A DNA stretch of 64,000 bases from positions 1-64,000 of the IMG/VR virus record IMGVR_UViG_3300046170_000378; one strand, given 5' to 3'. This document shows positions 4,549 through 61,189 of this stretch, piece after piece; position 1 is the first letter of the stretch, and each line of letters opens with the position of its first letter. The notes beneath the pieces were generated by a model. It was not told the DNA's origin, did not search any database, and saw only the letters and a list, made by a program, of their open reading frames with translations. The position numbers and the translations under genes are program-made.

Positions 4549-4709
4549 CAATATACGAAAAATAAATGACAACCCAAAGCAATTCAGCGACTAGTTACGA
4601 ACAACTTACGAACCGAAAAAACTCGCAACTTAGCATGAAACAATAAGCAAAAATCACGTATTATATAAGGAGAACCGCGATTAAGCCTAGGGCCCCTATA
4701 ACTAACAAA

Positions 4710-4728
4710 GGCGACTATAGAAGTCGCC
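4710..4728 (-). terminator. Probable terminator hairpin after 4758-5234
   Basis: GGCGACT-TCTAT-AGTCGCC followed by TTTGTT on the minus strand. Confidence 0.5.
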
Positions 4729-4757
4729 AATGTGAATCAACTAGTGCGCGCTACCAA

Positions 4758-5234
4758 TTAAACCTCAACCAGAGTAATATTCTTAAATGAATCCTCTAGC
4801 TTATAAGCATTGTCAGCCCAAGTTTTAGAACCAATAGCCTTCCAGTGACCATGATCCGCCATCTTAGGGAAGCAGCTATGGATAGTACCAATCTTAATAT
4901 TCTCCAAGATACAGTTAGCTACAGTAACAAACTTACCAGCCTTAAGGGCCAAAGCAGTCAAGTAATGATCTGCACCTGGATGGGTAGACTTAAGCTCTAT
5001 AGTATGGAGAGCATTCTTTTGGTATCGGCTAACCAAGTTCTCTAGGGTAGACTTACCATCAGAGATACAAAAGAAACCAGCTCTACACTTAGTGATCACT
5101 CGGTATTCATACTCAACGTCCCACTTAAAGCCATACTCACTAGTATGGAAGCGGTGCATTTTACCACCTATAGCTTGCTCAATAGAGAAGGTAGTGGCAT
5201 CGGAATGTTTGTCATAGTGTTCTTTAATATACAT
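4758..5234 (-). CDS. Hypothetical protein
   Basis: 158-aa ORF with its own class I promoter at 5259-5282. Confidence 0.7.
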   Translation of the reverse strand: MYIKEHYDKHSDATTFSIEQAIGGKMHRFHTSEYGFKWDVEYEYRVITKCRAGFFCISDGKSTLENLVSRYQKNALHTIELKSTHPGADHYLTALALKAGKFVTVANCILENIKIGTIHSCFPKMADHGHWKAIGSKTWADNAYKLEDSFKNITLVEV

Positions 5235-5319
5235 ATCTTTTAGCTTTTAATTACAGTACTAATATACCACAAATAGTTGACACTAAAAAATCCAGGCTAA
5301 TAAAGTTACGAACAATTTG

Positions 5320-26813: not shown

Positions 26814-29800
26814 ATGCAACTAAGAATTAAGCAAATTTTAGATTTAATCAGTAGTAATCCCAGTAACGGCGATTACTTTTCATACAACTCTAATACTGGA
26901 CAATATGAAAATACTGCGGCTCCACTTGATGGGACCTCTGTAAAATATGCGACAACGTTTAATGGTCCACATGGAACGGATGAAAGTCGTGGTCCTGGTG
27001 AAGACTTGGGTAGTTTAACTGTAGAAGAAGGTTTATCATATATTGGAGGTGAACTTATTACAATTGTACCAGTCGTTAACCCTGAAAATATTCAAGTAGC
27101 AAGAGTAACCAGCTATAGCGGTACAACTTTGACAATTGAACATATCTCACACACAGGAACTCAATCGTATTCTGGTAGTGAAGATTGGAATATTAATTTA
27201 ACGGGTTTAAGTGGCACGTCTGGCACATCAGTAAAATATGCTACAGTATTTGACGCTCCTCATGGAACAGCTGAAAGCCGTGGTCCTAGTGAAGACTTAG
27301 GTTCTTTAACAATAGAAACAGGCTTATCATATATCGGCGGTGAATATATTACTATTTCACCAGTTGTTAGCCCTGAAAATATTCAAGTAGCAAGAGTAAC
27401 TAGTTACAATGCGACTACTGGTGTTATAACATTTGAACACATATCACACACAGGAACTCAATCATATTCAGGTAGTGAAGATTGGAATCTTAATCTAAGT
27501 GGTGAAAACGGTTCTTCGGGAACTTCTGGAACTTCAGGAACTGATGGCTCTTCAGGAACTGACGGAACTTCAGGAACTGATGGCTCTTCTGGTACAAATG
27601 GTACAGATGGATCAAGCGGTTCTTCAGGTACAAATGGTACAAATGGTTCTTCAGGTGTTGATGGTTCTTCAGGTACTGATGGTACTTCTGGTACAAACGG
27701 TACTGATGGATCAAGCGGTTCTTCTGGAACAAACGGTACAGATGGTTCTTCAGGAACTGATGGCACAAATGGTTCTTCTGGAACTAATGGTACTGATGGA
27801 TCAAGCGGTTCTTCAGGTATTGATGGTAGTCCAGGTTGGGGTATTCAAATGCAAGGCCAAGTTGCAACAGAAGATGATTTACCTGCTGACGATGATTCAA
27901 CACGCTTAGAAGATGGTTATGCTTATATAGTACAATCAGACGATTCTATATGGGTTTGGACTCAAGAAGATGGCTGGATTTCTGGTGGTTCTATTCAAGG
28001 GCCTTCGGGTTCTTCAGGTACTGACGGTACTAATGGAACTTCAGGTACAGATGGTTCTTCTGGCACAAATGGCACAAATGGTTCTTCTGGAACTAACGGA
28101 ACTTCTGGAACTAACGGAACTTCTGGAACTAATGGTACTGATGGATCAAGCGGTTCTTCTGGAACTGATGGAACTTCTGGTACAAATGGCTCTTCAGGTA
28201 CTGATGGCTCTTCTGGAACTGACGGAACAAATGGCTCTTCAGGTACTGATGGCTCTTCAGGTACTGATGGAACTTCAGGAACTGATGGAACTTCAGGTAC
28301 AAATGGTACAGATGGTTCGAGCGGTTCTTCTGGAACTGATGGAACTTCAGGAACAAATGGCTCTTCTGGTACTAATGGAACAAATGGATCAAGTGGTTCT
28401 TCTGGAACTGACGGAACTTCAGGTTCTAATGGATCAAGTGGTTCTTCAGGGTCGAGCGGTGTAAGTGCACAGCAATGTGACGGTTATTCAAGAATAACTT
28501 CAGGTAATTTATTAAGTCCTAATCCATTAGCAGAAGGAAATATTCAACTACTACAAAGCTATAGCGTACATACTACAACAGCAGCTAATGTTGGTTATAT
28601 AAGAATTGGAGAAAATACTCCAGGAACAATTTCGACCATTGCAGGCGGAGAACGTTTTATAAAAATAGAAAACATAGGAGATCCTACTGCATATACTTTA
28701 TTTAATATAAGTAACTACAACGGTGCCTACAAAATATGGTATATTAGTAACGCATTACAATATGGTGGCGGTGCAGACTTAAGTCAAGATGAATTTTGTG
28801 TTTCATCACATACACAATATCTACCGGTAGTAGACGAAGATGGTAGTGCTCCAAGCGAAAGAGGCGTTCCTAATACAAATCTTACATTTCTTTGGGACAA
28901 CGTAAGCGCAACTAGTATATCTTCTGGTGACATAAACATTGATGTAAATTTACAAAATGCAGTCGTAGGAGATCTATATCAATTTAATATTTCGGCTACT
29001 AACTCAAAGGGTACATCAGTGGCCACTGAATTACAGGCAATCAACAGTGTTAATAACACAATGGGTTCTGGATTCTTAACAATATATGATCAAAATTCGG
29101 ACAGTACAGCAACATTTATTGTTCCTTCTAGTCATTCGCAGACTTCAGCTGGATTAAACTTTAGAGATGCAGAGCTTGTTCAAATAAAAGGTCTTTGGGA
29201 AACTACAAAGGGCTTAGATTCTAATGGAAACGAAATATCTATAGATACTGAAGTATTGCTAGGATATGAGTTATTTGGAAACGATGGAACAAGCGGTACT
29301 AATGGTACTAATGGATCAAGCGGATCAAGTGGTTCTTCAGGTTCAAACGGTACAGATGGATCAAGCGGATCTTCAGGTTCGAATGGTTCGAGTGGAACGA
29401 GTGGATCTTCGGGTTCAAGTGGATCTTCAGGAACTGATGGAACTTCAGGAACTGATGGATCAAGCGGATCTTCAGGAACTGACGGAACTTCAGGAACTGA
29501 CGGAACTTCAGGAACAAATGGAACTTCAGGAACTGATGGATCAAGTGGATCTTCGGGTTCAAGTGGATCTTCGGGTTCAAGTGGATCAAGTGGATCTTCG
29601 GGATACGACGTTCCAACAGGTGCAACAGTCGGTGACTTACCAAATGGAGAATACGAAGGACAGATTGGTTTTACTGGAGAAGGTTTAGTTTACATTTGGA
29701 AAGGCGGAGCATGGTCTCCATATTTAGACATGAACGGAACTAGTGGAACAACTGGAACTTCAGGTTCTGATGGATCAAGCGGTTCTTCAGGAACTGATGG

Positions 29801-31802
29801 ATCAAGTGGCTCTTCAGGTTCGAGTGGTAGAAGTGGTACTTCAGGAACTGATGGATCAAGCGGATCTTCAGGAACTGATGGATCAAGCGGATCTTCAGGT
29901 TCAAATGGTTCAAGTGGATCAAGCGGTGTAGACGGCGACAGAGGTGGAAAAGGAATTGAATCATCTAACAATGACGACCCGAATGATGCTGGTATTGTAG
30001 GAGATTACGAAGGAGTGTTATACTATTCTGCTATTGGAACAGTTTGGGTATGGGACAAAGCATCAAACATATGGAAATTTGTAGGAAGCATAAGCGGTTC
30101 TTCAGGAACTAATGGAACAAATGGTTCTTCAGGAACTGATGGTTCTTCAGGAACAAATGGTACAAATGGTTCTTCAGGAACTGATGGTTCTTCAGGAACA
30201 AATGGTACAAATGGATCGAGTGGTTCTTCGGGAACTGATGGCTCTTCAGGAACTGATGGCTCTTCAGGAACTAATGGAACAAATGGCTCTTCAGGAACTG
30301 ATGGCTCTTCAGGAACTGATGGAACAAATGGATCAAGTGGTTCTTCAGGAACTGATGGATCTTCAGGTACTAATGGATCGAGTGGTTCTTCAGGAACTGA
30401 TGGCTCTTCAGGTACAAGTGGTTCTAATGGATCTTCAGGATCGAGTGGTTCTAATGGATCTTCAGGGTCGAGTGGTACTAATGGTACTGATGGATCGAGT
30501 GGTTCTTCGGGTTACCAAGGTGCTTTAACAGGTGAAGAGAGTAATCCAAACAACAATTATACTGGCTCTTTTGCTGGACAGTTATACTTTGCATTTGATG
30601 GAACAGTTTGGTTCTGGGACGGTGCGAGTTGGAAAATAATTAACGATTTAAATGGAACTTCAGGTACTAATGGTACTAATGGATCAAGCGGTTCTTCAGG
30701 GTCAGATGGCTCTTCTGGTTCTAGTGGATCGAGCGGATCTTCAGGAACTAATGGAACTTCAGGAACTAATGGAACTAATGGTTCAAGCGGTTCTTCTGGA
30801 ACTGATGGATCAAGTGGATCAAGTGGATCTTCTGGATCTAGCGGAAAAAACGGAACTAATGGAACTTCAGGTTACCAAGGTGCGCTATCAGGTGAAGAAA
30901 ACGATCCAAATGGCACATACACTGGCTCTTTTGTAAATCAGTTATACTTTGCATTTAATGGATCAGTTTGGTTCTGGGACGGTGTGAGTTGGAAACAAGT
31001 TACTGATTTAAATGGTTCTTCTGGAACTGATGGAACTTCAGGTTCTAATGGATCAAGCGGTACTAATGGTACTAACGGTTCAAGTGGTTCAAGTGGTTCT
31101 TCAGGAACAACTACTATTGACTACAACGTAAAAGATAGAATCTTAGTATCTACTGGAAATTCTACAATAGAAGCTGAAGAAGCTCTAACATATCACAGAG
31201 AACAGAGTATTTTACACACAGCAACAAATAGAAATATCTTTGGTATTGCTGAAGAACATACAATATATGCTGGTGGTTTCGGTATAGGTAACGGTTTAGA
31301 TAAAATGGTTACTGATTATGGCCTAACTGAATGGTATAGATTTGTACCTACTGCTGAAAGATCAGAATATGGAGGAAAATCTCACTTCTCAATAGGAACA
31401 GGTTCTATGTTGGACGAAAGAGATATGTCAGCCCCACAAAATGTTATATGGGACGCATCTTGGCCAAATGGATTTGGTATACAAAAATCTACTAGAAAGC
31501 TCAAGCATGATATTATTGATTTAGATTTTAATGCTGATGAATTCTTTAAACACATGAGACCAGTTTCTTTCAAATGGAACGGAACCGATAGATTAGATTC
31601 AGGTTTTATTGCAGAAGAAGTTGCAGAATTTGATTCTAGATTGGTAGCATGGATGCCAAGTAAAGACGAAGAAAGTGGAGAAGACATTATGGAAGTATCT
31701 TCTGTAAACTATGACAAGATAACTGCATACTTAGTGAAAGTTGTTGGAGATCTTAGAGAAGAAGTTAAGTCTTTAAAAGATGAAATTAAGAAACTTAAAT
31801 AA
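26814..31802 (+). CDS. Tail fibre with Ser/Thr-rich Gly-X-Y repeats and a C-terminal peptidase S74 intramolecular chaperone
   Basis: Long (GTSGTDGSS)n runs; duplicated ~100-aa N-terminal domain; STRKLKHDI...RPVSFKWN...GFIAEEV...VNYDKI plus a terminal coiled coil. Confidence 0.8.
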   Translation: MQLRIKQILDLISSNPSNGDYFSYNSNTGQYENTAAPLDGTSVKYATTFNGPHGTDESRGPGEDLGSLTVEEGLSYIGGELITIVPVVNPENIQVARVTSYSGTTLTIEHISHTGTQSYSGSEDWNINLTGLSGTSGTSVKYATVFDAPHGTAESRGPSEDLGSLTIETGLSYIGGEYITISPVVSPENIQVARVTSYNATTGVITFEHISHTGTQSYSGSEDWNLNLSGENGSSGTSGTSGTDGSSGTDGTSGTDGSSGTNGTDGSSGSSGTNGTNGSSGVDGSSGTDGTSGTNGTDGSSGSSGTNGTDGSSGTDGTNGSSGTNGTDGSSGSSGIDGSPGWGIQMQGQVATEDDLPADDDSTRLEDGYAYIVQSDDSIWVWTQEDGWISGGSIQGPSGSSGTDGTNGTSGTDGSSGTNGTNGSSGTNGTSGTNGTSGTNGTDGSSGSSGTDGTSGTNGSSGTDGSSGTDGTNGSSGTDGSSGTDGTSGTDGTSGTNGTDGSSGSSGTDGTSGTNGSSGTNGTNGSSGSSGTDGTSGSNGSSGSSGSSGVSAQQCDGYSRITSGNLLSPNPLAEGNIQLLQSYSVHTTTAANVGYIRIGENTPGTISTIAGGERFIKIENIGDPTAYTLFNISNYNGAYKIWYISNALQYGGGADLSQDEFCVSSHTQYLPVVDEDGSAPSERGVPNTNLTFLWDNVSATSISSGDINIDVNLQNAVVGDLYQFNISATNSKGTSVATELQAINSVNNTMGSGFLTIYDQNSDSTATFIVPSSHSQTSAGLNFRDAELVQIKGLWETTKGLDSNGNEISIDTEVLLGYELFGNDGTSGTNGTNGSSGSSGSSGSNGTDGSSGSSGSNGSSGTSGSSGSSGSSGTDGTSGTDGSSGSSGTDGTSGTDGTSGTNGTSGTDGSSGSSGSSGSSGSSGSSGSSGYDVPTGATVGDLPNGEYEGQIGFTGEGLVYIWKGGAWSPYLDMNGTSGTTGTSGSDGSSGSSGTDGSSGSSGSSGRSGTSGTDGSSGSSGTDGSSGSSGSNGSSGSSGVDGDRGGKGIESSNNDDPNDAGIVGDYEGVLYYSAIGTVWVWDKASNIWKFVGSISGSSGTNGTNGSSGTDGSSGTNGTNGSSGTDGSSGTNGTNGSSGSSGTDGSSGTDGSSGTNGTNGSSGTDGSSGTDGTNGSSGSSGTDGSSGTNGSSGSSGTDGSSGTSGSNGSSGSSGSNGSSGSSGTNGTDGSSGSSGYQGALTGEESNPNNNYTGSFAGQLYFAFDGTVWFWDGASWKIINDLNGTSGTNGTNGSSGSSGSDGSSGSSGSSGSSGTNGTSGTNGTNGSSGSSGTDGSSGSSGSSGSSGKNGTNGTSGYQGALSGEENDPNGTYTGSFVNQLYFAFNGSVWFWDGVSWKQVTDLNGSSGTDGTSGSNGSSGTNGTNGSSGSSGSSGTTTIDYNVKDRILVSTGNSTIEAEEALTYHREQSILHTATNRNIFGIAEEHTIYAGGFGIGNGLDKMVTDYGLTEWYRFVPTAERSEYGGKSHFSIGTGSMLDERDMSAPQNVIWDASWPNGFGIQKSTRKLKHDIIDLDFNADEFFKHMRPVSFKWNGTDRLDSGFIAEEVAEFDSRLVAWMPSKDEESGEDIMEVSSVNYDKITAYLVKVVGDLREEVKSLKDEIKKLK

Positions 31803-31828: not shown

Positions 31829-34800
31829 ATGCCTAGAAGATCACTAAAAAGTATTGCCAATATGGTTGCAGCTATGAAGTTTGGCAGAAATGCAACAAAT
31901 ATAGCTAACGCAAAAAACGCAAAAATAGGTTTAAATAATCCTGGTTTTAAAGATGCGCATAAACCAAGTGCTTATTCTGCTTCGCAAGAATACACTGATT
32001 TATACACACTTGGCCCAATAATAGACGACATCTTAGATGCAATTCATGCTCTTGAAGATGAATCTGCCGGAATAGGTGAGTATTTACATGATCACTTTGG
32101 ATCCGAAGAAGATAAGATTCAAATACCTGCAGATTTAAGAGTAGAAATAGGAGGCGCTTTTGTTCAAGCTCTATATGAAAACTCAGACAATATAATTATA
32201 GGTGCAGACGTCTTTTTGCCTAATTCAGGTATAGTTAATTTTCAAATAACTGGAAATAATACATTACAAGTAGGTGGAGTACCAATCATTAACGCAAGTG
32301 GAGAATGGATTGGACCTTCTACGGGACTTAAGGGCCAGAAAGGTCAGAGAGGTGTAGCTGGAACTTCAGGAACTGATGGTACATCAGGATCTTCAGGTTC
32401 AAGTGGATCTTCGGGTACTGACGGATCTTCAGGTACTAATGGAACAAATGGATCTTCAGGTACTGACGGATCTTCAGGTACTAATGGAACTAGTGGTGTT
32501 GACGGAGCTAAAGGTCAAAAAGGACAGACAGGCCAAAAAGGACAAAAGGGTCAAACCGGTGCGGCAGGAACTAGTGGTACTAATGGAACCGATGGAACTA
32601 GCGGAATTAAAGGCCAAAAGGGTCAAAAAGGACAAACAGGTTCAACAGGTGCCAAGGGTAACACAGGTAACTTCGGTGGAGCTAGTTTTGATTACACGCA
32701 TGATTCTTCTACAAATGCAATGTCTGACCCAGGAAGAGGTAGAGTTAGAACAAACAGCAATACAATGTCGAGCGTTAGCTCATTAGCAATAGACGCTGAA
32801 GACGATTTTGGTAATGATATTAGTAATTTCTTAACTACTGTAGATGCATCAACATCTGCAGTTAAAGGTTTTGTAAGATTTGCAGAAAAGACAAATACTA
32901 CTTCATTTGTAACATATGCAATATATGATTTAATAAACAGATCAGGTTGGTGGGAATTAAGTGTCGATATGACTGCAACATCTGCACCAACTATTCCATT
33001 TGCAAACGGAGCAGACATTATAATGTCCTTTGTTGTAACTGGTAATGTGGGTGATAAAGGTCAAAAAGGAGCGTCAGGTGTTGATGGAATCTCTGGAACA
33101 TCTGGTCAAGACGGAACATCTGGAACTGATGGTACATCAGGATCTAGTGGATCAAGCGGTTCTTCTGGAACCGATGGATCTTCAGGTACTAATGGTACTA
33201 ATGGATCTTCAGGTTCATCTGGTTCAAGCGGAACTTCAGGTTCATCTGGTTCAAGCGGTACTAATGGTACTAATGGATCTTCGGGTTCTTCAGGATCTAG
33301 TGGATCTTCAGGTTCTTCAGGATCTAGTGGTTATCAAGGCGCAAAAAGTGGTGAATATGGAGATCCAAATAGTGTAAATCTACTTGGAGAATTTAACGGC
33401 CAATTATACTTTGATGGAAACGGTTTTGTTTGGACATGGATCTCAGCAGAAGGCGCTTGGATAAAGGTAAATAATTTAACTGGTCAAAAAGGACAAAAAG
33501 GGCAAACTGGAGCCCAAGGTATTAAAGGTGTTACTGGACCAAAAGGTAATGCTGGTTCTTCTGGAACCGATGGATCAAGTGGATCAAGTGGTTCTTCAGG
33601 ATCGAGCGGAAGAAATGGAACTAGTGGAGTTAACGGTGCTAAAGGACAAACTGGGGCACAAGGTGCTCAAGGTGCACAAGGACCACAGGGTGCTCAAGGT
33701 GTACAAGGTATTAAAGGTCAGAAAGGTCAAAAAGGTCAAACAGGAGCTCAAGGTCCTCAGGGACAAAAAGGTCAAACAGGTTCTCAAGGTTTTCAAGGAC
33801 ATGGTTATACAAAAGCTGCCTTAGATGGTGTAGATTTAGTATTAACACACACGTTAGATGGAGACATTAATGTCGGTAGAGTTTACGGAAATCAAGGTGC
33901 TCAAGGTGCTCAAGGTCAGAAAGGTCAGAAAGGTCAAACTGGTGGTCAAGGTGGTCAAGGTGCTCAAGGTATTAAAGGTGTTACTGGGCCGACCGGACCG
34001 CAAGGTGCTACTGGACCACAGGGTATTAAAGGTGTTACTGGGCCGACCGGACCGCAAGGTGCTACTGGACCACAGGGTATTAAAGGTGCTACTGGTGCTA
34101 AAGGTGTTACTGGACCTAAAGGAAACACCGGTGCTCAAGGACCTACCGGACCACAGGGACCTCAAGGTCATGGCGTTAAAACAGCCTACTTATCAGGCAC
34201 TGATTTAATTATAGATCATACATTAGAAGGTTTAATAAATGTCGGTAGAGTTTATGGAAATCAAGGTGCTAAAGGTCAGAAAGGACAAACCGGTGGCCAA
34301 GGTGGCCAAGGTGCACAAGGTATTAAAGGTGTTACTGGACCGACCGGACCTCAAGGGCCAACAGGTGCACAAGGTGCACAAGGTATAAAAGGTCAGAAAG
34401 GTCAGAAAGGTCAAACTGGAAATACTGGACCTAAAGGAAGTACAGGTGCTCAAGGACCACAGGGTCATGGCTATACAAGAGCCACTCTAGTTGGTGCAAA
34501 TTTAGTATTAACACATACACTAGACGGAGATCTTGATATTGGTAGAGTTTACGGAAATCAAGGTGCTCAAGGACCAACAGGTGCACAAGGTGCTCAAGGA
34601 CCAACAGGTGCTGGCGGTGCTAAGGGACAAAAAGGTCAAAAAGGACAAACCGGTGCTCAAGGTGGTGGAGGTGCTCAAGGAGCTAAAGGTGCAACTGGGC
34701 CAACCGGACCAAAGGGTGCTATTGGTGTTACAGGTGCTCAAGGTCCAACTGGAGCTAAGGGTCAAAAAGGACAAACTGGTGCTCAAGGTGGACAAGGTGC

Positions 34801-35059
34801 TCAAGGTATTAAAGGTGCAACTGGGCCGACAGGACCAAAGGGTTCTACCGGGCCAACTGGGCCGCAAGGTGCAACCGGACCACAAGGTGCAACCGGACCA
34901 ACACTAAACGTTTCCAATAATTCTAACAATAGAATTATCACGGCAACTGGTGGATCTACAGTAAATGCTGAGTCTGCATTAACATTCGATGGAACATATT
35001 TAAATATTAACGGAGCTGGAATATCACACGATGGCACCGTAATGAGATTTACAGTATAA
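31829..35059 (+). CDS. Collagen-like fibre protein (1076 aa), possibly the proximal long-tail-fibre (gp34-position) subunit
   Basis: Long GQK/GAQ/GPT/GIK triplet runs interrupted by repeated HTL(D/E)G..VGRVYG modules; directly precedes the gp35-like gene. Confidence 0.75.
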
Positions 35060-42868: not shown

Positions 42869-43798
42869 ATGAAAATTAAAGATTTCCAAACATTTATTAA
42901 TGAACGCGATAGTCAATTGCGCAAAGTAATCATGTGTGTTTCTACCGAACTAAGTGACTTTGAGTTTGTAATAGGTGATGATTTTCATGCTAGTCAATAT
43001 ATGGAATTATTTACAAAGGGAGATAATCCTAAAAAAGCCACATTACCTGTAATTAATTTTTGCAATACACACACTGAAAGATTATTAGAAGCGGGTACTC
43101 CAAAGGAATTAATTTATAATCCTAAAGAGAAAAAGATGGAAATAGCATCTAAAGTAAAATGGCATAAAACTCACAACAATTCTGAGCACGTGCCTAAAAC
43201 TATCTTAAACGTAGATGACATTGATCAACTTAAATTTCCTATTATAGCAAAACCTGAGAACAGATTTTCAGGCCAAGGTATAATTAAAATCGATTCACTC
43301 GAGGATGCTAAGGATATGGATCTTTCTGACTTTGAAGTTTTCAGCGAGAAGATAGACATCGATGAAGAACATAGAATAATGATGTGGAGAGGCGAGCCTG
43401 TTATGTGGGTACAAAGAGTACATGGTAACGAGGAGACCAAAAAGATGACTAAGAAAAAGGACGATAAGTTATACTTTAAATATGTACTTAAGAAAATGGA
43501 AGACATGCCACAGGATTGGCAAGCAGTCTTTGATGAATTTGCAGAAGCACATAATGAATTAGACATATATTCAGTTGACTTGATGGTAGATACAGACGGA
43601 AAACCGTGGGTAGTAGAAATGTCTTCTGAATTTATGCCGCTATATGGTGTAATGTCATATTACTATAAAAAAGTTTTTGAAGATTTTTATGGTAAAAAAC
43701 TAAATAAAGAAGAAGAGTCACAGATAGATATGCTTCAGCAAAAAGACGTTGAAGCTACTATTAATTTTGATCAAAAAAGATTTTCAGTAGAAAAATAA
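42869..43798 (+). CDS. ATP-grasp ligase paralog with a capsid-targeting-like N-terminus
   Basis: FPIIAKPENRFSGQGI, EHRIMM, VDLM...WVVEMS; starts MKIKDFQTFINE. Confidence 0.7.
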   Translation: MKIKDFQTFINERDSQLRKVIMCVSTELSDFEFVIGDDFHASQYMELFTKGDNPKKATLPVINFCNTHTERLLEAGTPKELIYNPKEKKMEIASKVKWHKTHNNSEHVPKTILNVDDIDQLKFPIIAKPENRFSGQGIIKIDSLEDAKDMDLSDFEVFSEKIDIDEEHRIMMWRGEPVMWVQRVHGNEETKKMTKKKDDKLYFKYVLKKMEDMPQDWQAVFDEFAEAHNELDIYSVDLMVDTDGKPWVVEMSSEFMPLYGVMSYYYKKVFEDFYGKKLNKEEESQIDMLQQKDVEATINFDQKRFSVEK

Positions 43799-45798: not shown

Positions 45799-46143
45799 AT
45801 GAAACACCTTAAATCTCTAAAAGAATTTTTAAATGAAGAGTATGTTATGCAGCATTTGGAAAAAGAGTATAATATTATTCTTGATATATGGGACAATGGA
45901 GAGTATTTAGAACTGGGTAAAATAGAAGTTCCTAAAAATCTTAGATCTTTAGGCGTCGGCACCAAAGTCATGAAAAGAATTGTGAAAATGGCAGACGAAC
46001 AAAACAAAGATATTAGGCTTACGCCTTCTAAAGATTTTGGTGCTACCTCGGTATCTAGACTTGAAAAATTCTATAGAACTTTTGGTTTTGTAAAGAATAA
46101 AGATTTAAAATATAAGGACACTATGGTCCGATATAGTAAGTAA
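45799..46143 (+). CDS. GNAT acetyltransferase with a capsid-targeting-like N-terminus
   Basis: IEVPKNLRSLGVGTKVM (acetyl-CoA motif), LEKFYRTFGF; starts MKHLKSLKEFLNE. Confidence 0.75.
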   Translation: MKHLKSLKEFLNEEYVMQHLEKEYNIILDIWDNGEYLELGKIEVPKNLRSLGVGTKVMKRIVKMADEQNKDIRLTPSKDFGATSVSRLEKFYRTFGFVKNKDLKYKDTMVRYSK

Positions 46144-46147
46144 CAAT

Positions 46148-46675
46148 ATGAAATATCTAAAATTATTTGAACAATTTCTTTTAGAAAAAGAACCAGAGTG
46201 GCAAGACGCCGATTGGCCTGATGCTGAAGGTAGATTTAGAGATTTATCTATTAAGGATTTAGCAGCATGGCTAATTAAAACCAGAAAGAAAGATCTAAAA
46301 GCAATTAGTGGATCATTGACGCAACAGATAGTCTTTAACAGAAATGAAGATCCTGAATATGCTGAAAAAATGGAAAAGACTAGACAGGAAGTTTATAAAC
46401 AATTAGATAGACAAGATCTTATGGAAGATTTTGAAACAGATAATCCAGAACTGGACAGAATTAGAAAATTTGCAGGATCTATACAAGATTTACACACATG
46501 GATGAGAAGAGCGATGCAAGATCAGGGTCGTGATGGTGAAACAAATCCGTATAAAGACACTATAATGGTAAATGGTCCACAAACTGGCGAATTAGATCAG
46601 TCTTTACCATATCAAGATTTTCAAAATGGTAAATCAGACCTAGTAAAGAATAGACATGGAAGAAAAGACAGCTAA
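46148..46675 (+). CDS. Hypothetical protein with a capsid-targeting-like N-terminus
   Basis: Starts MKYLKLFEQFLLE. Confidence 0.7.
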   Translation: MKYLKLFEQFLLEKEPEWQDADWPDAEGRFRDLSIKDLAAWLIKTRKKDLKAISGSLTQQIVFNRNEDPEYAEKMEKTRQEVYKQLDRQDLMEDFETDNPELDRIRKFAGSIQDLHTWMRRAMQDQGRDGETNPYKDTIMVNGPQTGELDQSLPYQDFQNGKSDLVKNRHGRKDS

Positions 46676-55463: not shown

Positions 55464-55494
55464 AGGGGGAAGATAGCATCTTCCCCCTTTTTTT
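55464..55494 (+). terminator. Intrinsic terminator
   Basis: AGGGGGAAGAT-AGC-ATCTTCCCCCT followed by a T run. Confidence 0.85.
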
Positions 55495-55506
55495 GATATA
55501 TAAAGT

Positions 55507-56205
55507 ATGAAACACATTAAGGCATACGAAAGTTTTGTGAATGAAGGTAGATCTAAGTATGATGGTCTTGCCTCAAAACTGACTAAATTAACGTTTAGGA
55601 AATGGGTAAACACATATAAAGGTGGCAAAGCAGTTATCAATTATATGGACCAAATCGAAGAACGAGGTTTAGAATTTGACTTTGATGCAACTATTCATAT
55701 CGATAAGAAATATAAAGGCTTTGAAGTTTTACCTTCAACTGGTGCAGATGGTAGAGATGAAGACGATGATGGTGATTATCAAACTCCATATATTCTAATA
55801 GATTTTGGTATAAATCCTGATTGGATTCCAGGAGAATGGTCTACTGTATATTTTCATTTAGCAGATGTTATTAGACATGAAATGGAACACATAACACAGG
55901 ATGGCGTAGACACTGGTAATTATAGAGCTGGCAAACCTATTGAAGATGATAGCGAAATAAGAAATCTAATTAAATTAGGTCTTCTACCATACTTTCATTA
56001 TTTAATGTTACCTAAAGAAGTAGATGCTAATTTACAGGGACTTAGATATGAGGCTAAAAAAAGAAAAGAGCCAATGAGTGATGCAGTTAACAGATACTTA
56101 GACACTCAAATAGAAGGTGACGTAATTAGTAAACAAGAAAAAGAAGAAGTGTTAGATCTTTGGAGAAAACGCGCTGCAAAAATAGGTGGTATACCGAAAT
56201 TTTAA
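55507..56205 (+). CDS. HExxH zincin-motif protein with a capsid-targeting-like N-terminus
   Basis: VIRHEMEHITQ and downstream EVDA; starts MKHIKAYESFVNE. Confidence 0.65.
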   Translation: MKHIKAYESFVNEGRSKYDGLASKLTKLTFRKWVNTYKGGKAVINYMDQIEERGLEFDFDATIHIDKKYKGFEVLPSTGADGRDEDDDGDYQTPYILIDFGINPDWIPGEWSTVYFHLADVIRHEMEHITQDGVDTGNYRAGKPIEDDSEIRNLIKLGLLPYFHYLMLPKEVDANLQGLRYEAKKRKEPMSDAVNRYLDTQIEGDVISKQEKEEVLDLWRKRAAKIGGIPKF

Positions 56206-56206
56206 T

Positions 56207-59200
56207 ATGAAATACATTAATGAAAAGGCGCCTAGCGTAAAAAGCAAAATTAAGGACATCAATAAAAAGATTGGTAAACTGGTTTCTAAAAAAGAGGATG
56301 CTATTAGTAAAGCCAAAGAAATGGCAGATTCTGAAGAACCTTCTGGAAAAATGCAAGCTTCATTGGCAAAGATACAACTTAGACAATCTGAAAGCGAAGC
56401 TGAAAAATTAATGTTGCAAAAGCAGGCTGAAATACTTAAAGCTAAAATAGACACTGCTAAGAAAAAAGAAAAAACAACCAAAGACATAGATATAGAAGAA
56501 ATGGAAAATAGATCAATTACAATATTAGAAGGTGTTATGTCTGATATACACCAGATGATTAACAACCATAAAAACTTTGATTCTTTTCAAAAAGAATTCT
56601 TCAAAGAGTACGGACATAAAAAGGTAATGAAGAAAACACCAGAATTTTTGGAATGGCTAGAAGCTCTTTATAACGACAGTCAATTTGCAGTCGCTGAAGC
56701 AGATGCAAAACCAGGACCAGATCCATACATGAGAGGTTTAGATGACGATGATGAAGAGAAAAAAGAAGATAAAATGAAAAAGCAAGCTGAAATGGACGAT
56801 GACGATCCAGATGCTTATAAAGAATTACCAGGTGACAAAGAGGCCAAAGCTAAAGGTGAAGTAAAAACTTCTAAACATGTAAAAAAATATCACGAATTAT
56901 ATGGTGATAAAAAAGATGAATCAGTAGTTACTGAAGCTAAAGGTTTACCAAGCCATGCTAGAAATTTATCTATAAAACTAAAAACGCACTGGTTACCTGA
57001 CACAGACAACAAGGATATTTATTTCTTAGCTGATACAAACAAAGGTCAAACAATAACCATTGATTTATCTGTAAGAACTGGAGAATATAAAGTTATTGAT
57101 AAAAAAGATAATGTTATTTATCAGGGCGGAGACCCTTATGCTGCCGCTAAGTTAATTGAATCAGTAGAAATATCTGAAAAGGCTAAGCCTTATGCTTTTG
57201 TACTCAATGATTGGTTTAACGCAGTAGAAAAGGCTGGTAATTTTGAAAATATTGGAAAAGAATTAAAAGCAGCTGGATACGAATTTGAATTTGAAGATAA
57301 TAAAAACAATCCAGCATATAAAGTTGAACATGATGAAGCTACTTTTGCAATTGCTAATAAGAAATATTGGGGAAGACAATGGCGGGCCATTGAGAAACAA
57401 ATAGGTGATATCGCAATAGGTTGGGTTTTTCCAAATGATACGTATAATGAATCTAATATTAATGAAGAAAAGGCAGAAGGCGATAGAGGTAAAATAGCCG
57501 ATGCTAAAATAGAAACTGCTCTTAAAACTAAGGCTGAAGAAACTGGAGTACCAATTGGTTTAATTAGAATCATAATGAGAAGAGGTATGGCCGCGTGGAA
57601 AACTGGTCACAGGCCAGGTGCAAGTGAACAACAATGGGGATATGCACGAGTAAATGCATTTTTAACTAAAGGTGAAGGTACATGGGGTGGAGCAGACAAA
57701 GATGTCGCTAAAGAAGTTAGAGATGGCGGTCATGACAAAGGACTTAAAGAGAGAATAGAATCAGATATTAGATTGAGTGATAAAGTAGTTGCCTTTAAAA
57801 CTGATGATTCTAGTTTCAACGGACAATCTCCTAATACAATTACATGTAATAACTGTACATGGACTTGGATGAAACAAGACGGTGGAGATGATATGTACGT
57901 GTGTCATAAATGTGGAACAAATAATGCACCTCTATTGGGTGAATCTACATTAAACGAAGAAGATACTTACAACGACTATCCTGCTGCCGCAAAGAAAAAT
58001 GCTAAGAAAGCTCTTGATTGGAGAGACGAGCATGGAAGAGATGAAGTTGATGCGGGAACAGCAGTTGGCTGGACTCGTGCAAATCAATTAGCAAAGGGTG
58101 AAAAGATCTCAGCTGACACTGTAAAAAGAATGGCATCGTTCAATAGACACAGAAAGAATTCTTCAATAAAGGCTGAATTAAAAGGAACTCCATGGAAAGA
58201 CAAAGGTTATGTTTCTTGGTTAATTTGGGGCGGAGATGAAGGCGTCGATTGGGCTATGAAAAAATCAAAAGAAATAGACGATATGAAAAAAGAGTCAAAA
58301 CAAATGAAGTACGTTAAACCACTTAATGAAGCTGAGAAGTATATCACTGATGAATTTAAAGTAGGTGATAAAATTAAAACTAATTTTGGTGAATGGGAAG
58401 TAATTGAAACTGACTATGCACCTAATAAAAGTTTTATAGCACCTTTTGTATTTAAAGGAAAAGATATGGAAAGAGTAAACATACCTAATCCTCCTAAGAC
58501 TAATAAGAAAGCTGTAGGCTATAAAGTTACTGATGGTGGCAAATACCCTATTATTGGTTTCTTGTATCAATATAAAGATATTACTAAACTTGCAACAGTT
58601 GGCGTTGATGAATCAGTGGTTAACGAAAAAGATAAACACACATCAACTGATTTTTCTAAACCAGGAAATAATGGTGACATTTACTTTTCAAAAAGAGAAG
58701 GTGATGCTGTTGGTATTAGATTAGAAGATAAATTACAAATGATTTATGTTTTTCAAGAAGAACCTAAATTAGGAAGGATTCAAAAAACAGATAAACGTTG
58801 GGAAAACATGGGTCCAGCTTCTGAAGAACTTTTAATTGATTTAAGAGGTAGAACAAATGGTAAAATATTATTTGACTTTGTTTCAACTCTTGAAGAATCA
58901 GTAGTTACTGAAGCATTCATCGATCATGATAAAATGAAGTACGTTAAACCACTATATGAAGCTAAAATCAAAGTCACTAAAGATAAATGGCCTTACTTAG
59001 AGTTTAAAGTAGGTAGCAAGAAACACAAAGTAGAGTTTGATTATGAAGATATTATTGATGATCATGGAAATGAGGGTCAAGATCAATATTGGATAGGTAA
59101 AGATGATGAAGGTCAGGAATGGATGATTGATGTTTATGCAAACTATATGGGCGATGTTGAAGAGGTTCACTATGATACTATTGTAAAAGAATCTGTTTCG

Positions 59201-60199
59201 TCTGAATTTTCTCCAATGGGATATGCTAAGCGCGTGGTTTCAGGAGCAATTAAAATAAAAGATGCAATGAAAGAAGCTGGAATTTCTCTAGCTAACATGG
59301 CCAAATTAATTAAGAGAATCGATAAATCTTTTGATGTCGATGCAGCATTTTTAGAAAAGAATGTTATGCAAGATGATCCTGAAAAATTCGTTGAATCTAG
59401 TAAGCGTAAGCTTAAGTATATTAGAGTACTTAATGAAGACTACTCTCAAAGAGCAAGAAATTTTAGAGTTAATCTTAGAACAAGACTTGAAGCTATGAAG
59501 AAAGGAGAAAAGATTAGTTATGGTAAACTTGCTTGGACGGCATTAGGTAATGGTAATTTCAAAGACAGTAAAGGTAGAACAGTACCTTATCAAGATATAG
59601 TACAAGATTTGAAACATGCAGTAAAACCTGATATATTGAGACATCGTGGTGCAAGCGGTGCTGATATGGTAGATGCTTATTTAGCATTTGAAAGTAAAGT
59701 AAATGAAGGTTACTGGTCTAGTTATGAATATGACAAGTGGACTAAAGAGAATGGCAAACCTAAATATCCAAAATGGGTAAGGACTACTTTAAAAGAAATC
59801 GTTAAAGGTGGTTTTATGGAGCCAGTCTATGATGCTGAACACAACTACATGGTTTTATGGTTAGCTTCATTAGAGAACAAGAATAGAGCTGAATTATATG
59901 CATATGATAAGAAGGGTGAAAAAGCTCTCGGTAAAGTAGGTTATGCAATGTATCAAAGATTCTATAACGACTTAACTGGATACAATATGTTCTTTATGCA
60001 AGGGGCGATGTATGCCTTAGAAGTATCTAAGAATATTAAAGATAGAGTGGCTAATGGCGAACCAGTTGAACCTGCATATTATATGATGAAAGAATTCTTT
60101 AACAACATGGGCATGGACACTAAGAGAAGTAGAGTTTTTAATGCAGCTTATGAAAAGTTAGAAAAATGGATGAAAGAAAACAGCATTCCAACTTTATAA
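56207..60199 (+). CDS. Large multi-module protein (about 1330 aa), putative head-internal polyprotein
   Basis: Starts MKYINE; recurring ES-x-[VIL]-[NT]-E and KYV/I..L.E linkers; Zn-ribbon CNNC..CHKC; RRGMAAWKTGHRPG..QQWGYARVN module; YP...KNA...GWTRANQLA...WLIWGG module. Confidence 0.75.
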   Translation: MKYINEKAPSVKSKIKDINKKIGKLVSKKEDAISKAKEMADSEEPSGKMQASLAKIQLRQSESEAEKLMLQKQAEILKAKIDTAKKKEKTTKDIDIEEMENRSITILEGVMSDIHQMINNHKNFDSFQKEFFKEYGHKKVMKKTPEFLEWLEALYNDSQFAVAEADAKPGPDPYMRGLDDDDEEKKEDKMKKQAEMDDDDPDAYKELPGDKEAKAKGEVKTSKHVKKYHELYGDKKDESVVTEAKGLPSHARNLSIKLKTHWLPDTDNKDIYFLADTNKGQTITIDLSVRTGEYKVIDKKDNVIYQGGDPYAAAKLIESVEISEKAKPYAFVLNDWFNAVEKAGNFENIGKELKAAGYEFEFEDNKNNPAYKVEHDEATFAIANKKYWGRQWRAIEKQIGDIAIGWVFPNDTYNESNINEEKAEGDRGKIADAKIETALKTKAEETGVPIGLIRIIMRRGMAAWKTGHRPGASEQQWGYARVNAFLTKGEGTWGGADKDVAKEVRDGGHDKGLKERIESDIRLSDKVVAFKTDDSSFNGQSPNTITCNNCTWTWMKQDGGDDMYVCHKCGTNNAPLLGESTLNEEDTYNDYPAAAKKNAKKALDWRDEHGRDEVDAGTAVGWTRANQLAKGEKISADTVKRMASFNRHRKNSSIKAELKGTPWKDKGYVSWLIWGGDEGVDWAMKKSKEIDDMKKESKQMKYVKPLNEAEKYITDEFKVGDKIKTNFGEWEVIETDYAPNKSFIAPFVFKGKDMERVNIPNPPKTNKKAVGYKVTDGGKYPIIGFLYQYKDITKLATVGVDESVVNEKDKHTSTDFSKPGNNGDIYFSKREGDAVGIRLEDKLQMIYVFQEEPKLGRIQKTDKRWENMGPASEELLIDLRGRTNGKILFDFVSTLEESVVTEAFIDHDKMKYVKPLYEAKIKVTKDKWPYLEFKVGSKKHKVEFDYEDIIDDHGNEGQDQYWIGKDDEGQEWMIDVYANYMGDVEEVHYDTIVKESVSSEFSPMGYAKRVVSGAIKIKDAMKEAGISLANMAKLIKRIDKSFDVDAAFLEKNVMQDDPEKFVESSKRKLKYIRVLNEDYSQRARNFRVNLRTRLEAMKKGEKISYGKLAWTALGNGNFKDSKGRTVPYQDIVQDLKHAVKPDILRHRGASGADMVDAYLAFESKVNEGYWSSYEYDKWTKENGKPKYPKWVRTTLKEIVKGGFMEPVYDAEHNYMVLWLASLENKNRAELYAYDKKGEKALGKVGYAMYQRFYNDLTGYNMFFMQGAMYALEVSKNIKDRVANGEPVEPAYYMMKEFFNNMGMDTKRSRVFNAAYEKLEKWMKENSIPTL

Positions 60200-60242
60200 A
60201 CTAAATTTGATATATAATAAAAGAAAACAATAATACAATATT

Positions 60243-60803
60243 ATGGCAAAACAAATATTATCGTTCGAAGAGTACAGCAAGAATCTTAAAGCTTCTGATG
60301 TAGGAGAACACGAAAACCCTGAAGGGTATCCAGCACCAGAAGGTGAAACTGATGACGTCGAAGATTTTAATGACGAAGAGGTTGAAGAAGACGAGGAAAG
60401 AGAAGAAGAAGTTGCAGACGCAGAAGATGTTGAAGAAGCTGAACTAGAGGCAGATCCTGAACAAAGATCTGAAGACGAAAACGATGCTGAAGTTTTAGTT
60501 GTTTCAGAAATGGTTGCTAAGGTTTATAAGAACGTAGTTATGGAAGCATGTAATTATGCAGGAGATGATTACGATGACCACACTTTAGAAACATATATGA
60601 AAGAAAATGCTGCACTAGTTGCAGGTATGGCAGCACAAGCACTCGAAGAAGCTTACAAAGAAATCAACGAAGCTGATGAAATGGCTAACGAAACTTACGA
60701 AGCTATGATGAATGAGATGAAAGAGGCTTATTGTAATAAAATTGATCAATGTAGAGAATCTTTTACTGGTGCACCAAGAGGTTACGCTGAAGACGAAGCA
60801 TAA
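60243..60803 (+). CDS. Highly acidic protein, possible head-internal or scaffold-like
   Basis: D/E-rich; MAKQILSFEEY start; class III promoter at 60209. Confidence 0.65.
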   Translation: MAKQILSFEEYSKNLKASDVGEHENPEGYPAPEGETDDVEDFNDEEVEEDEEREEEVADAEDVEEAELEADPEQRSEDENDAEVLVVSEMVAKVYKNVVMEACNYAGDDYDDHTLETYMKENAALVAGMAAQALEEAYKEINEADEMANETYEAMMNEMKEAYCNKIDQCRESFTGAPRGYAEDEA

Positions 60804-60820: not shown

Positions 60821-61117
60821 ATGAAATACTTGAAATTATTTGAACAGTTTGTTAACGAAAAATTTAATTCTAAGAGAGCAGCGAAAGAGCTAATAGCAAT
60901 GGGATTTAAAAACGTTGATGGCAATGGCGGTGAAATCTCAGTTGAAACTGCAGAAATGGAAAATCCATTCGGTCATGATGCGGCGTTTACGTTCTTTTGG
61001 AACGGTAAAGACGTATGGGCAGAAGCTGAAGATGGTTCTTATGTAGAACAAACCCAAGAAATCGAAACTGTAGAGCAGTTTGCAGACTGTCTTGAATTTG
61101 GAGAGGGCTGGTCATAA
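60821..61117 (+). CDS. Hypothetical protein with a capsid-targeting-like N-terminus
   Basis: Starts MKYLKLFEQFVNE. Confidence 0.7.
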   Translation: MKYLKLFEQFVNEKFNSKRAAKELIAMGFKNVDGNGGEISVETAEMENPFGHDAAFTFFWNGKDVWAEAEDGSYVEQTQEIETVEQFADCLEFGEGWS

Positions 61118-61189
61118 ACAGGCACACATTTTAATAAACTTTTTAAGAAGTCCGTGTATAATACATGGACTTTTTTATTTTAACAAGAT

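What the first reader, a model, noticed from the sequence alone, without database searches (positions are those of the whole stretch)
56207..60199. A 1.3-kaa apparent polyprotein built from modules joined by protease-site linkers, some identical at DNA level
Seen: recurring linkers DESVVTE, ESVEISE, ESNINE, ESTLNE, ESVVNE, ESVVTE and ESKVNE, plus internal tag copies MKYVKPLNE, MKYVKPLYE and LKYIRVLNE, separate unrelated modules of roughly 50-150 aa. The modules include a Zn ribbon, the GHRPG..QQWGYARVN module and the GWTRANQLA..WLIWGG module. Two linkers are exact DNA repeats: GAATCAGTAGTTACTGAAGC (56918 and 58895) and AAATGAAGTACGTTAAACCACT (58302 and 58932). Inference: the head protease releases about a dozen small effectors, and the linker repeats allow modules to be gained or lost by recombination.
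Basis: partly seen in the sequence, partly recalled or inferred. Interest (0 to 1): 0.7.

Follow-up and report, generated by a model that had tools for sequence, protein, structure and literature searches.

The report
Shuffled phage head-cargo polyprotein gene
A giant marine phage encodes one 1,330-residue protein made of about a dozen unrelated small domains joined by copies of the short signal that T4-like phages use to trim head-packaged proteins, and related phages have reshuffled these domains exactly at the joints, which suggests a way for phages to build and swap sets of proteins that travel with their DNA.

Summary
Window 56207-60199 (+) is one 1,330-aa ORF of 11-12 modules. They are separated by E-S-x-[VIL]-x-E linkers (6 copies against 0.01 expected) and three internal MKYVKPLNE-type tags. 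Both exact DNA repeats exist and are unique in the 212-kb genome.

The genome is an uncultured jumbo phage with a T4-type major capsid protein and a gp21-family prohead protease. That family cleaves after Glu. The linkers match the last six residues of the N-terminal tags (MKHIKAYESFVNE and similar) on small neighbouring genes. The same modules occur elsewhere as free-standing proteins with such a tag directly before the same boundary.

At least 389 metagenomic relatives exist. The best 120 show 85 different module orders. Two indels against close relatives lie exactly between 10-11-nt linker or tag repeats, so module gain, loss and reordering at the linkers is demonstrated.

Cleavage by the head protease and packaging are well-supported inferences, not shown. 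"Effector" function is untested: only DUF5824 has a family name, and no module matches a solved structure.

Closest known are the T4 internal proteins with their capsid targeting sequence, and the polyvalent proteins of phages. I found no description of this polyprotein architecture. I rate it a new variant of a known kind.

The parts
55464..55488 (+). Intrinsic-terminator-like hairpin with a T run, closing the upstream unit
   Evidence: 11-bp stem, 6 GC pairs, T run; sequence seen
55495..55503 (+). GATATATAA, a late-promoter-like motif 12 nt before the tagged HEXXH gene. No such motif lies between that gene and the polyprotein.
   Evidence: 27 copies on the + strand and 1 on the - strand. 19 copies lie within 50 nt upstream of ORF starts. 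The copies at 145075, 149626, 151270 and 112282 lie within about 100 nt upstream of the portal, MCP, the 326-aa ORF at 151308 and the second polyprotein. Calling it a promoter is inference.
55507..56205 (+). 232-aa protein with an N-terminal tag MKHIKAYESFVNE and an HEXXH motif (RHEMEH). It is conserved directly upstream of the polyprotein in relatives.
   Evidence: No Pfam hit. Atlas gives only weak leads to SprT-like and LPD23.
56207..60199 (+). Polyprotein ORF, 1,330 aa, 152 kDa, starting with the short tag MKYINE
56225..56935 (+). Module N (res 7-243): charged, coiled-coil-like leader ending in linker DESVVTE (56915-56935). It is shared by 28 of 120 relatives, nearly always as the first module.
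56936..57178 (+). Module M1 (res 244-324), ending in ESVEISE (57158-57178). It is absent from relative L004, with the junction inside the shared GAATCAGTAG.
57179..57466 (+). Module M2 (res 325-420), ending in ESNINE (57449-57466)
57467..57751 (+). Module M3a (res 421-515): DUF5824, a small helical domain with pLDDT above 90, in 51 of 120 relatives. Free-standing copies carry a tag directly before the same boundary.
   Evidence: (P0241)
57752..57958 (+). Module M3b (res 516-584): CxxC..CxxC putative zinc ribbon, ending in ESTLNE (57941-57958)
   Evidence: weak; low pLDDT
57959..58330 (+). Module M4 (res 585-708): helical domain GWTRANQLA..WLIWGG, pLDDT about 97, in 114 of 120 relatives. In other viruses it is fused to portal, prohead protease or capsid proteins. 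It ends in the internal tag MKYVKPLNE (58304-58330).
58331..58627 (+). Module M5 (res 709-807), beta-rich and poorly modelled, ending in ESVVNE (58610-58627)
58628..58912 (+). Module M6 (res 808-902), ending in ESVVTE (58895-58912). This is an exact 20-nt DNA copy of the first linker.
58913..58960 (+). Spacer M7 (res 903-918) holding the second internal tag MKYVKPLYE (58934-58960). It shares 22 nt exactly with the tag at 58302.
58961..59206 (+). Module M8 (res 919-1000), ending in the degenerate linker ESVSSE
   Evidence: P0247, P0213
59207..59437 (+). Module M9 (res 1001-1077): small helical domain, pLDDT about 87, ending in tag LKYIRVLNE (59411-59437). Its Leu codon is CTT, which is not a start codon.
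59438..59707 (+). Module M10 (res 1078-1167), ending in ESKVNE (59690-59707). In several relatives it sits near the N-terminus instead.
   Evidence: P0234
59708..60196 (+). Module M11 (res 1168-1330): helical domain, pLDDT about 90, in 93 of 120 relatives and always the last module
   Evidence: (P0133)
60209..60217 (+). Second GATATATAA promoter-like motif
60243..60803 (+). 186-aa very acidic protein, conserved downstream of the polyprotein block in relatives
60821..61117 (+). 98-aa protein with the full tag MKYLKLFEQFVNE
61145..61175 (+). Terminator-like hairpin closing the block

Best explanation
The ORF is a head-cargo polyprotein of a T4-like jumbo phage.

**Proposed mechanism**
1. It is transcribed with the tagged HEXXH gene just upstream, from a promoter-like motif that also precedes the head genes.
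2. Its N-terminal MKYINE tag and charged leader take it into the prohead core.
3. There the gp21-family prohead protease cuts after the Glu of each E-S-x-[VIL]-x-E linker and each MKY..L.E tag.
4. This releases about eleven folded pieces of 8-20 kDa, which stay in the head and enter the cell with the DNA.

**Origin of the linkers.** Each linker is the processing end of the T4-type capsid targeting sequence. Only the first copy keeps the targeting end.

**Recombination.** Because all joints are encoded by near-identical DNA, recombination between them, within a genome or between co-infecting relatives, deletes, inserts and reorders modules without breaking the frame. This gives a large family of mosaics.

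**Shown here:** the mosaic structure, the motif, its identity with the tags, the protease gene, and the breakpoints.

**Inferred:** late expression, packaging, cleavage and ejection.

**Speculative:** that the pieces act on the host, for example against defence.
For: **Motif and tags**
- The motif is enriched about 600-fold over shuffles.
- A logo from 171 distinct linker contexts has P6 E, P5 S, P4 V, P3 V/I/L, P2 N/T, P1 E and a hydrophobic P8, which makes a tandem hydrophobic-x-E site.
- The same six residues end the N-terminal tags of neighbouring small genes: ESFVNE at 55507, QFVNE at 60821, EFLNE at 45799.
- In the family, 83 of 117 proteins that start with Met carry a full tag and 25 more carry a short one. 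Only 7 of 280 ORFs in the genome do.

**Protease**
- The genome encodes Peptidase_S77 (T4 gp21), 42.5-45.3 bits against a cut-off of 27.
- The same protein also matches S80 (phiKZ type). A T4-type Gp23 capsid protein is present.
- Both protease families cleave after Glu, and in T4 the tag residues 8 and 10 govern processing (PMC9026906).

**Modules as independent units**
- Free-standing proteins carry a tag directly before the same module boundary. Examples are P0241 for M3a, P0154 and P0191 for M4, P0234 for M10 and P0247 for M8. P0252 starts MKKVKLFEEFIAE.
- Each module recurs on its own in other proteins: 5,225 representative clusters match.
- AF2 gives confident separate domains. All five linkers inside the modelled stretches fall in segments with pLDDT below 50, and pTM is 0.44 and 0.52.

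**Shuffling**
- The best 120 relatives show 85 architectures, and 36 module pairs occur in both orders.
- 50% of module junctions have a linker within 8 aa, against 8.7% of random positions.
- HSP ends pile up at the linkers.
- Breakpoints lie inside GAATCAGTAG and ATGAAATACAT.

**Link to the head.** M4 and DUF5824 are fused to portal, prohead protease, MuF or capsid proteins in unrelated viruses.

**Expression.** The GATATATAA motif is shared with the portal, the capsid gene and the second polyprotein gene, with near copies before the protease-scaffold gene.
Against: - There are no protein-level data. Cleavage, packaging and ejection are all inferred.
- The protease is only distantly related to T4 gp21, and its specificity is unknown.
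- In the capsid protein, the position that matches the T4 gp23 cleavage site has no Glu. This is my own reading against the T4 sequence as I remember it, so it is weak. The capsid protein does have INE|S twice within its first 26 residues.
- Plain hydrophobic-x-E sites also occur inside modules. Specificity would therefore have to come from the longer motif or from exposure.
- Docking of the protease with a linker peptide gave no answer.
- No module has a recognisable activity or a solved structural relative.
- M4 also occurs as a lone gene among DNA-metabolism genes in phage PaBG, so it is not always coded beside head genes.
Confidence: 0.62

Rival explanations
1. It is an uncleaved giant multidomain virion or injected protein, a polyvalent protein in the sense of Iyer et al. 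2017. The conserved linkers act only as flexible spacers and recombination sites.
For: The multidomain mosaic architecture and the head-associated domains fit. Some polyvalent proteins, such as the N4 virion RNA polymerase, are packaged unprocessed (PMC5512222). No cleavage data exist.
Against: A spacer need not keep an invariant Glu at P1 and P6 and a hydrophobic P3 across 171 contexts. The same motif ends the N-terminal tags of single-domain proteins, where no spacer is needed. None of the domain families that define polyvalent proteins is detected.
Confidence: 0.15
2. It is a scaffold or core component. Like T4 gp22, gp67 and gp68, it is cut into pieces that leave the head before DNA packaging, so the modules are not delivered and have no role in the host.
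For: The N module is charged and coiled-coil-like. T4 core proteins are cleaved at many sites and expelled (PMC9026906). The overall pI is near neutral and several modules are acidic.
Against: Scaffold fragments need not be compact, conserved, confidently folding domains. They also need not be swapped combinatorially among close relatives. A separate protease-scaffold protein with a long acidic region already exists. M4 and DUF5824 persist as fusions to portal proteins, which stay in the virion.
Confidence: 0.12
3. A different protease does the processing. The candidate is the tagged HEXXH protein encoded directly upstream, acting in the head or after injection, as proposed for zincin domains of polyvalent proteins.
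For: The HEXXH gene is directly upstream in this window, and its homologue stays just upstream in every relative examined, with one small tagged gene in between. It carries a tag itself. There are weak atlas leads to SprT-like and LPD23 clusters. Precedent comes from PMC5512222.
Against: Pfam finds no peptidase family in it, even at E 10. The atlas leads are below the tool's reliability marks. The linker motif fits the after-Glu rule of the gp21/gp175 family. The HEXXH protein's own tag ends in the same motif, which marks it as a substrate.
Confidence: 0.06
4. The internal MKY.. tags are internal translation starts, so the ORF is a set of nested genes that each make their own tagged protein.
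For: Two of the three internal tags in this ORF begin with ATG.
Against: The third tag starts with CTT. In relatives the internal tags often start with CTA or CTT Leu codons, which are not start codons. Family-wide, LKYIKPLNE (23) outnumbers MKYIKPLNE (14). Most joints (ES.V.E) have no Met at all.
Confidence: 0.05

Closest known systems
T4 internal proteins (IPI, IPII, IPIII, Alt) with the capsid targeting sequence, processed by prohead protease gp21
   Same: A short N-terminal tag starts MK and ends hydrophobic-x-Glu. A family member starts MKKVKLFEEFIAE; from memory, the T4 tag is MKTYQEFIAE. A gp21-family protease is in the genome. The cargo behind a constant tag is diverse, fast-evolving and unrelated. 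The genes cluster in a variable locus.
   Different: In T4 each cargo is a separate gene with its own tag. Here up to a dozen cargos are fused in one ORF. Only the processing half of the tag is repeated at each joint, and the joints serve as recombination sites. There is no sequence similarity to the T4 internal proteins (no PHROG hit). The phage is only distantly T4-like.
Polyvalent proteins of phages and conjugative elements (Iyer, Burroughs, Anand, de Souza, Aravind 2017, PMC5512222)
   Same: Many unrelated domains sit in one phage polypeptide, with extensive mosaicism. Delivery with the DNA is presumed, and proteolytic release of the domains has been proposed.
   Different: Those proteins are defined by a known domain set (zincin peptidase, DarB-like methylase/helicase, ADP-ribosyltransferase, LPD domains). 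Their processing is ascribed to their own peptidase domain. Here none of these domains is detected, and the joints are explicit sites for the head maturation protease.
Ejection and inner-body proteins of phiKZ and SPN3US, processed by gp175 and gp245
   Same: Jumbo phages with a gp21-related protease that cuts many head proteins after Glu within a short motif. The protease here also matches Peptidase_S80.
   Different: There the motif is S/A/G-x-E or A-x-E. Proteins lose propeptides or are cut once or a few times. No combinatorial polyprotein with repeated linkers has been described in the papers I could search.
Cargo domains fused to portal, MuF, prohead protease or capsid proteins (for example HRTV-28 gp9, HGTV-1 gp11, Roseobacter phage CRP-811 gp45; MuF-toxin fusions)
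   Same: The M4 and DUF5824 domains of this ORF are the same domains that ride on head-assembly proteins in those viruses.
   Different: There a head protein carries one or two such cargo domains. Here a tag and leader carry a string of cargos.
Polyproteins of eukaryotic RNA viruses
   Same: One translation product is cut by a viral protease at short repeated recognition sites.
   Different: There is no evolutionary relation. Those polyproteins have a fixed gene order and encode the replication and structural machinery, not an exchangeable accessory set.

Membership tests
T4-type internal head proteins with capsid targeting sequence | N-terminal tag of about 10 residues starting MK and ending hydrophobic-x-Glu | tested here: met
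   The ORF starts MKYINE, the short form. Full 13-residue forms are on neighbours at 55507, 60821, 45799 and 46148, and on 83 of 117 family members.
T4-type internal head proteins with capsid targeting sequence | gp21-family (Peptidase_S77) prohead protease and T4-type capsid protein in the same genome | tested here: met
   PF03420 at 45.3 and 42.5 bits, over the cut-off of 27. PF07068 Gp23 at 154 bits.
T4-type internal head proteins with capsid targeting sequence | Incorporated into the prohead core, tag removed by the protease, protein ejected with the DNA | not testable with these tools
   This needs virion proteomics or biochemistry. The docking attempt gave no answer.
T4-type internal head proteins with capsid targeting sequence | Sequence homology of the mature part to IPI, IPII, IPIII or Alt | tested here: not met
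   PHROGs gave only phrog_3041 for the DUF5824 part. Pfam gave no internal-protein family. T4-like phages themselves do not conserve the mature parts (PMC9026906).
T4-type internal head proteins with capsid targeting sequence | Expressed late with the head genes | tested here: inconclusive
   The GATATATAA motif is shared with the portal, capsid and other + strand genes. No transcript data exist.
Polyvalent proteins (Iyer et al. 2017) | Two to fifteen unrelated domains in one polypeptide of a phage or conjugative element, with mosaic architectures | tested here: met
   11-12 modules here, and 85 architectures among 120 relatives.
Polyvalent proteins (Iyer et al. 2017) | Domains from the characteristic set (zincin MPTase, DarB-like methylase/helicase, ART, GNAT, LPD domains and others) | tested here: not met
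   Pfam and NCBIfam find only DUF5824. One weak structural row names an LPD protein at E 0.065.
Polyvalent proteins (Iyer et al. 2017) | Linkage to head packaging (MuF or portal neighbourhood, or fusion) | tested here: inconclusive
   The gene lies 85 kb from the head genes. Its M4 and DUF5824 domains are fused to portal, MuF or protease in other viruses.
Pfam DUF5824 (PF19141) | Match over the gathering score | tested here: met
   52-53 bits against a cut-off of 25, residues 442-498. Only profile positions 63-122 of 127 are covered.
phiKZ-type processed head proteins (Peptidase_S80 substrates) | S/A/G-x-E cleavage motif and a gp175-type protease | tested here: inconclusive
   The protease also matches PF20034, at 25.4 bits against a cut-off of 23.4. 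The linker has V/I/L at P3, which is the T4 pattern.

The most novel reading that the evidence does not exclude
The locus is a combinatorial cassette system for injected proteins. The processing half of the capsid targeting sequence serves both as the protease site and, at DNA level, as a portable recombination joint. Marine jumbo phages can thereby assemble, swap and reorder whole sets of head-delivered host-takeover or anti-defence proteins in one ORF behind a single targeting signal. This would be a phage counterpart of polymorphic toxin cassettes, and a natural multi-cargo version of the T4 packaging tag used in engineering.
Probability: 0.35. Interest if true: 0.85.

Novelty: new variant of a known kind. 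Interest (0 to 1): 0.7.

Why it matters
**Biology.** If the pieces are cut out and delivered, one gene supplies a dozen proteins that reach the host before any phage gene is expressed. Its architecture also explains how such sets diversify quickly: 85 arrangements were found among 120 relatives.

**Discovery.** The finding gives a simple sequence rule, the tag plus E-S-x-[VIL]-x-E joints, for finding head-packaged proteins in uncultured T4-like and jumbo phages. The modules match thousands of metagenomic protein clusters (5,225 representatives). Two widespread unnamed domains, DUF5824 and the GWTRANQLA/WLIWGG domain, thereby become candidate capsid cargo.

**Engineering.** It suggests a natural design for packaging several cargos behind one targeting sequence.

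Tried and rejected
- **Family searches.** Per-module Pfam at E up to 5, NCBIfam, PHROGs, and PDB sequence searches with the whole protein and with a profile gave nothing beyond DUF5824 and phrog_3041.
- **Structure searches.** Foldseek against the PDB for both models, the VIA wide search for model 1, and AlphaFold DB clusters for model 2 gave no significant match. M3a resembles sigma-factor region 2 only at Z about 5, which the tool's own notes call uninformative.
- **Docking.** Protease domain plus a 25-residue linker peptide scored 0.00, which the tool reports as no answer.
- **Module clustering.** Single-linkage clustering of regex-cut segments collapsed into one cluster. I replaced it with greedy reference-module annotation. 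Some large X references there (X1, X6, X8, X12) probably still hold several modules, so the count of about 75 module types is approximate.
- **Paralogues.** I looked for paralogues of the modules in the same genome and found none.
- **Assembly chimera.** Rejected, because hundreds of independent contigs carry such ORFs.
- **Nested genes.** Largely rejected on codon grounds.
- **Capsid protein as calibration.** I tried to use the phage's own capsid protein to calibrate the cleavage site. It has INE|S twice in its first 26 residues, but nothing at the position I recall for T4, so I treat it as weak.

Full report
**What is in the sequence**

Window 56207-60199 (+) is a single ORF of 1,330 codons from ATG. 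The longer GTG start at 56186 would overlap the upstream gene.

- 56918 and 58895, 20 nt.
- 58302 and 58932, 22 nt.
- Each occurs only at these two places in the 212-kb genome.

ES.[VIL][NTS]E occurs six times, against 0.01 expected from shuffling and five times in the other 62,338 aa of the genome. The bare [VIL]xE motif is not enriched. Identical codons for the same peptide would arise by chance with probability about 0.006 to 0.01. The DNA identity therefore points to common descent or conversion of the joints, not only to selection on the peptide.

**Genome context**

- The window is the first 64 kb of a 212,342-bp IMG/VR virus record, judged 76% complete.
- The genome has a T4-type capsid protein (PF07068, 154 bits) and a prohead protease of the gp21 family. 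The protease scores 45.3 and 42.5 bits for PF03420 and is also over the cut-off for the phiKZ-type PF20034. It is fused to a long acidic scaffold-like tail.
- The capsid protein's best relatives are an uncultured huge phage (50%), Tenacibaculum phage PTm1 (35%) and the Lak phages. This suggests a jumbo phage of marine Bacteroidota.
- Both protease families cut after Glu within a short motif. In T4, residues 8 and 10 of the ten-residue capsid targeting sequence govern processing and residues 4 and 7 govern targeting (PMC9026906).

**The linkers are the processing end of N-terminal tags**

- Small genes nearby start MKHIKAYESFVNE (55507), MKYLKLFEQFVNE (60821), MKHLKSLKEFLNE (45799) and MKYLKLFEQFLLE (46148). 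Only 7 of 280 ORFs in the genome fit a tag pattern.
- The last six residues of these tags are the linker motif.
- A logo from 171 distinct linker contexts in the family has Glu at P1 and P6 (fixed by the search pattern) and Ser at P5 in 167 of 171. P4 is mostly V, P3 is V/I/L, P2 is N/T, and P8 is hydrophobic. Each joint is thus a tandem hydrophobic-x-Glu site.
- The polyprotein itself starts with the short form MKYINE.
- In the family, 83 of 117 proteins that start with Met have a full tag, and 25 more have the short form.

**The modules are independent units**

- An exhaustive HMMER search with residues 244-1330 found 5,225 representative clusters. Each module matched separately, in proteins of all sizes.
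- Free-standing proteins carry a tag directly before the same boundary as in the polyprotein:
  - P0241 for DUF5824
  - P0154 and P0191 for M4
  - P0234 for M10
  - P0247 for M8
  - P0133 for M11
- AF2 models of residues 421-807 and 1000-1330 give confident separate domains: M3a above 90, M4 about 97, M9 about 87 and M11 about 90.
- All five linkers inside the modelled stretches fall in segments below pLDDT 50, and pTM is 0.44 and 0.52.
- M3b, M5 and M10 were poorly modelled.

**Shuffling is real and happens at the joints**

- Two close relatives, L004 and L005, share the N and C modules but differ in the middle. One of them has M5 before M3-M4.
- A word-seeded search found at least 389 relatives of 733-1,534 aa.
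- Annotating the best 120 with reference modules gave 85 architectures, and 36 module pairs occur in both orders.
- M4 is in 114 of the 120 proteins. M11 is in 93 and is always the last module.
- 50% of junctions have a linker within 8 aa, against 8.7% of random positions.
- HSP ends against the window protein pile up at the linkers.
- At DNA level, L004 lacks M1 exactly between two copies of GAATCAGTAG.
- A 203-aa tagged gene present in L004 and L005 is absent from the window exactly between two copies of ATGAAATACAT.
- The locus is syntenic in more distant relatives (UvdE, HEXXH gene, small tagged gene, polyprotein, acidic protein, dCMP deaminase, helicase). There it holds a further mini-polyprotein and a collagen-like protein.

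**Link to the head**

M4 is fused to a prohead protease in HGTV-1, to the N-terminus of the capsid protein in Roseobacter phage CRP-811, and to a portal-MuF protein in HRTV-28. The same fold is found in portal, XkdF/S78 and Clp protease fusions, often together with DUF5824. It is not always coded beside head genes: in PaBG it is a lone gene beside topoisomerase.

**Expression**

A terminator-like hairpin (55464-55488) and a GATATATAA motif (55495) precede the HEXXH gene. One base (T, 56206) separates that gene's stop codon from the polyprotein's ATG. The motif occurs 27 times on the + strand and once on the - strand. It precedes the portal, capsid and second polyprotein genes, with near copies (ATATATA) before the protease-scaffold gene. 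Late co-expression is therefore plausible but not shown.

**Interpretation**

The best reading is a head-cargo polyprotein. It would be targeted once, cut at each joint by the gp21-family protease, and built so that the joints double as recombination sites.
- Demonstrated: the mosaic structure and the recombination.
- Inferred: cleavage and packaging.
- Untested: what the pieces do. No module has a known activity or a solved structural relative.
- Rivals: an uncleaved polyvalent protein, a disposable scaffold, cleavage by the neighbouring HEXXH protein, or nested genes. The last is largely excluded because many internal tags start with CTT or CTA codons.

**Comparison with what is known**

It works like the T4 internal-protein system. 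It resembles the polyvalent proteins of Iyer et al. (PMC5512222), but it is not a sequence member of either set. Full-text searches for a phage polyprotein tied to the prohead protease, or for the three domain names, found nothing. The library lacks most subscription journals, so prior description cannot be excluded.

I rate it a new variant of a known kind, with interest 0.7.

Noticed in passing
G000:C1:112324-114039 (outside the window): A second, smaller polyprotein of the same design. It is 571 aa, starts MEKLKSFEQFAKV, and has joints GIEVNE, AFESVVNE, CNESVVNE and VKALNE. GATATATAA lies upstream at 112282.
   Followed up: partly
G000:C1:147160-149622 (outside the window): The prohead protease domain (S77/S80) is fused in one 820-aa ORF to a long, extremely acidic region with EEEVEA repeats and a C-terminal part. 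This looks like a protease-scaffold fusion. VNE|S follows the protease domain at about residue 166.
   Followed up: partly
window 55495, 60209, 45787, 42857 and 23 further sites in G000: GATATATAA occurs 27 times on the + strand and once on the - strand, mostly 10-40 nt before ORF starts, including the portal. The copy before the capsid gene lies about 100 nt upstream. It is a candidate late promoter, related to but distinct from the T4 TATAAATA.
   Followed up: partly
window 55507-56205: Tagged 232-aa protein with HEXXH (RHEMEH). Its homologue stays just upstream of the polyprotein in all relatives examined, directly adjacent in this window. Pfam finds no family. It is a possible packaged metallopeptidase.
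   Followed up: partly
L004:3810-4400 and L005:4455-5045: Relatives carry an extra 196-aa tagged gene (MKYINTYNSFLNE) between the HEXXH gene and the polyprotein. The window lacks it, with the junction inside the shared ATGAAATACAT.
   Followed up: yes
L010:14004-17186 and L011:13653-16874: Relatives have a protein of about 1,060 aa with long collagen-like GTS/GEx triplet repeats inserted in the same locus. It may be a fibre. The window's genome lacks it here.
   Followed up: no
window 42869-43798, 45799-46143, 46148-46675, 60821-61117: Further small genes with N-terminal tags (MKIKDFQTFINE, MKHLKSLKEFLNE, MKYLKLFEQFLLE, MKYLKLFEQFVNE). They are candidate single-cargo head proteins.
   Followed up: partly
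window 26814-31802 and 31829-35059: Two very large ORFs (1,662 and 1,076 aa) on the + strand. I did not examine them.
   Followed up: no
window 1-6000: The first 6 kb have higher GC (0.40-0.44) and minus-strand ORFs. The rest of the window is almost entirely + strand with positive GC skew. This may be a module boundary or a replication-related switch.
   Followed up: no
family proteins P0030-P0091 etc.: M11 is always the last module and M4 is nearly universal, while everything between them varies. This suggests fixed end pieces with a variable middle.
   Followed up: partly
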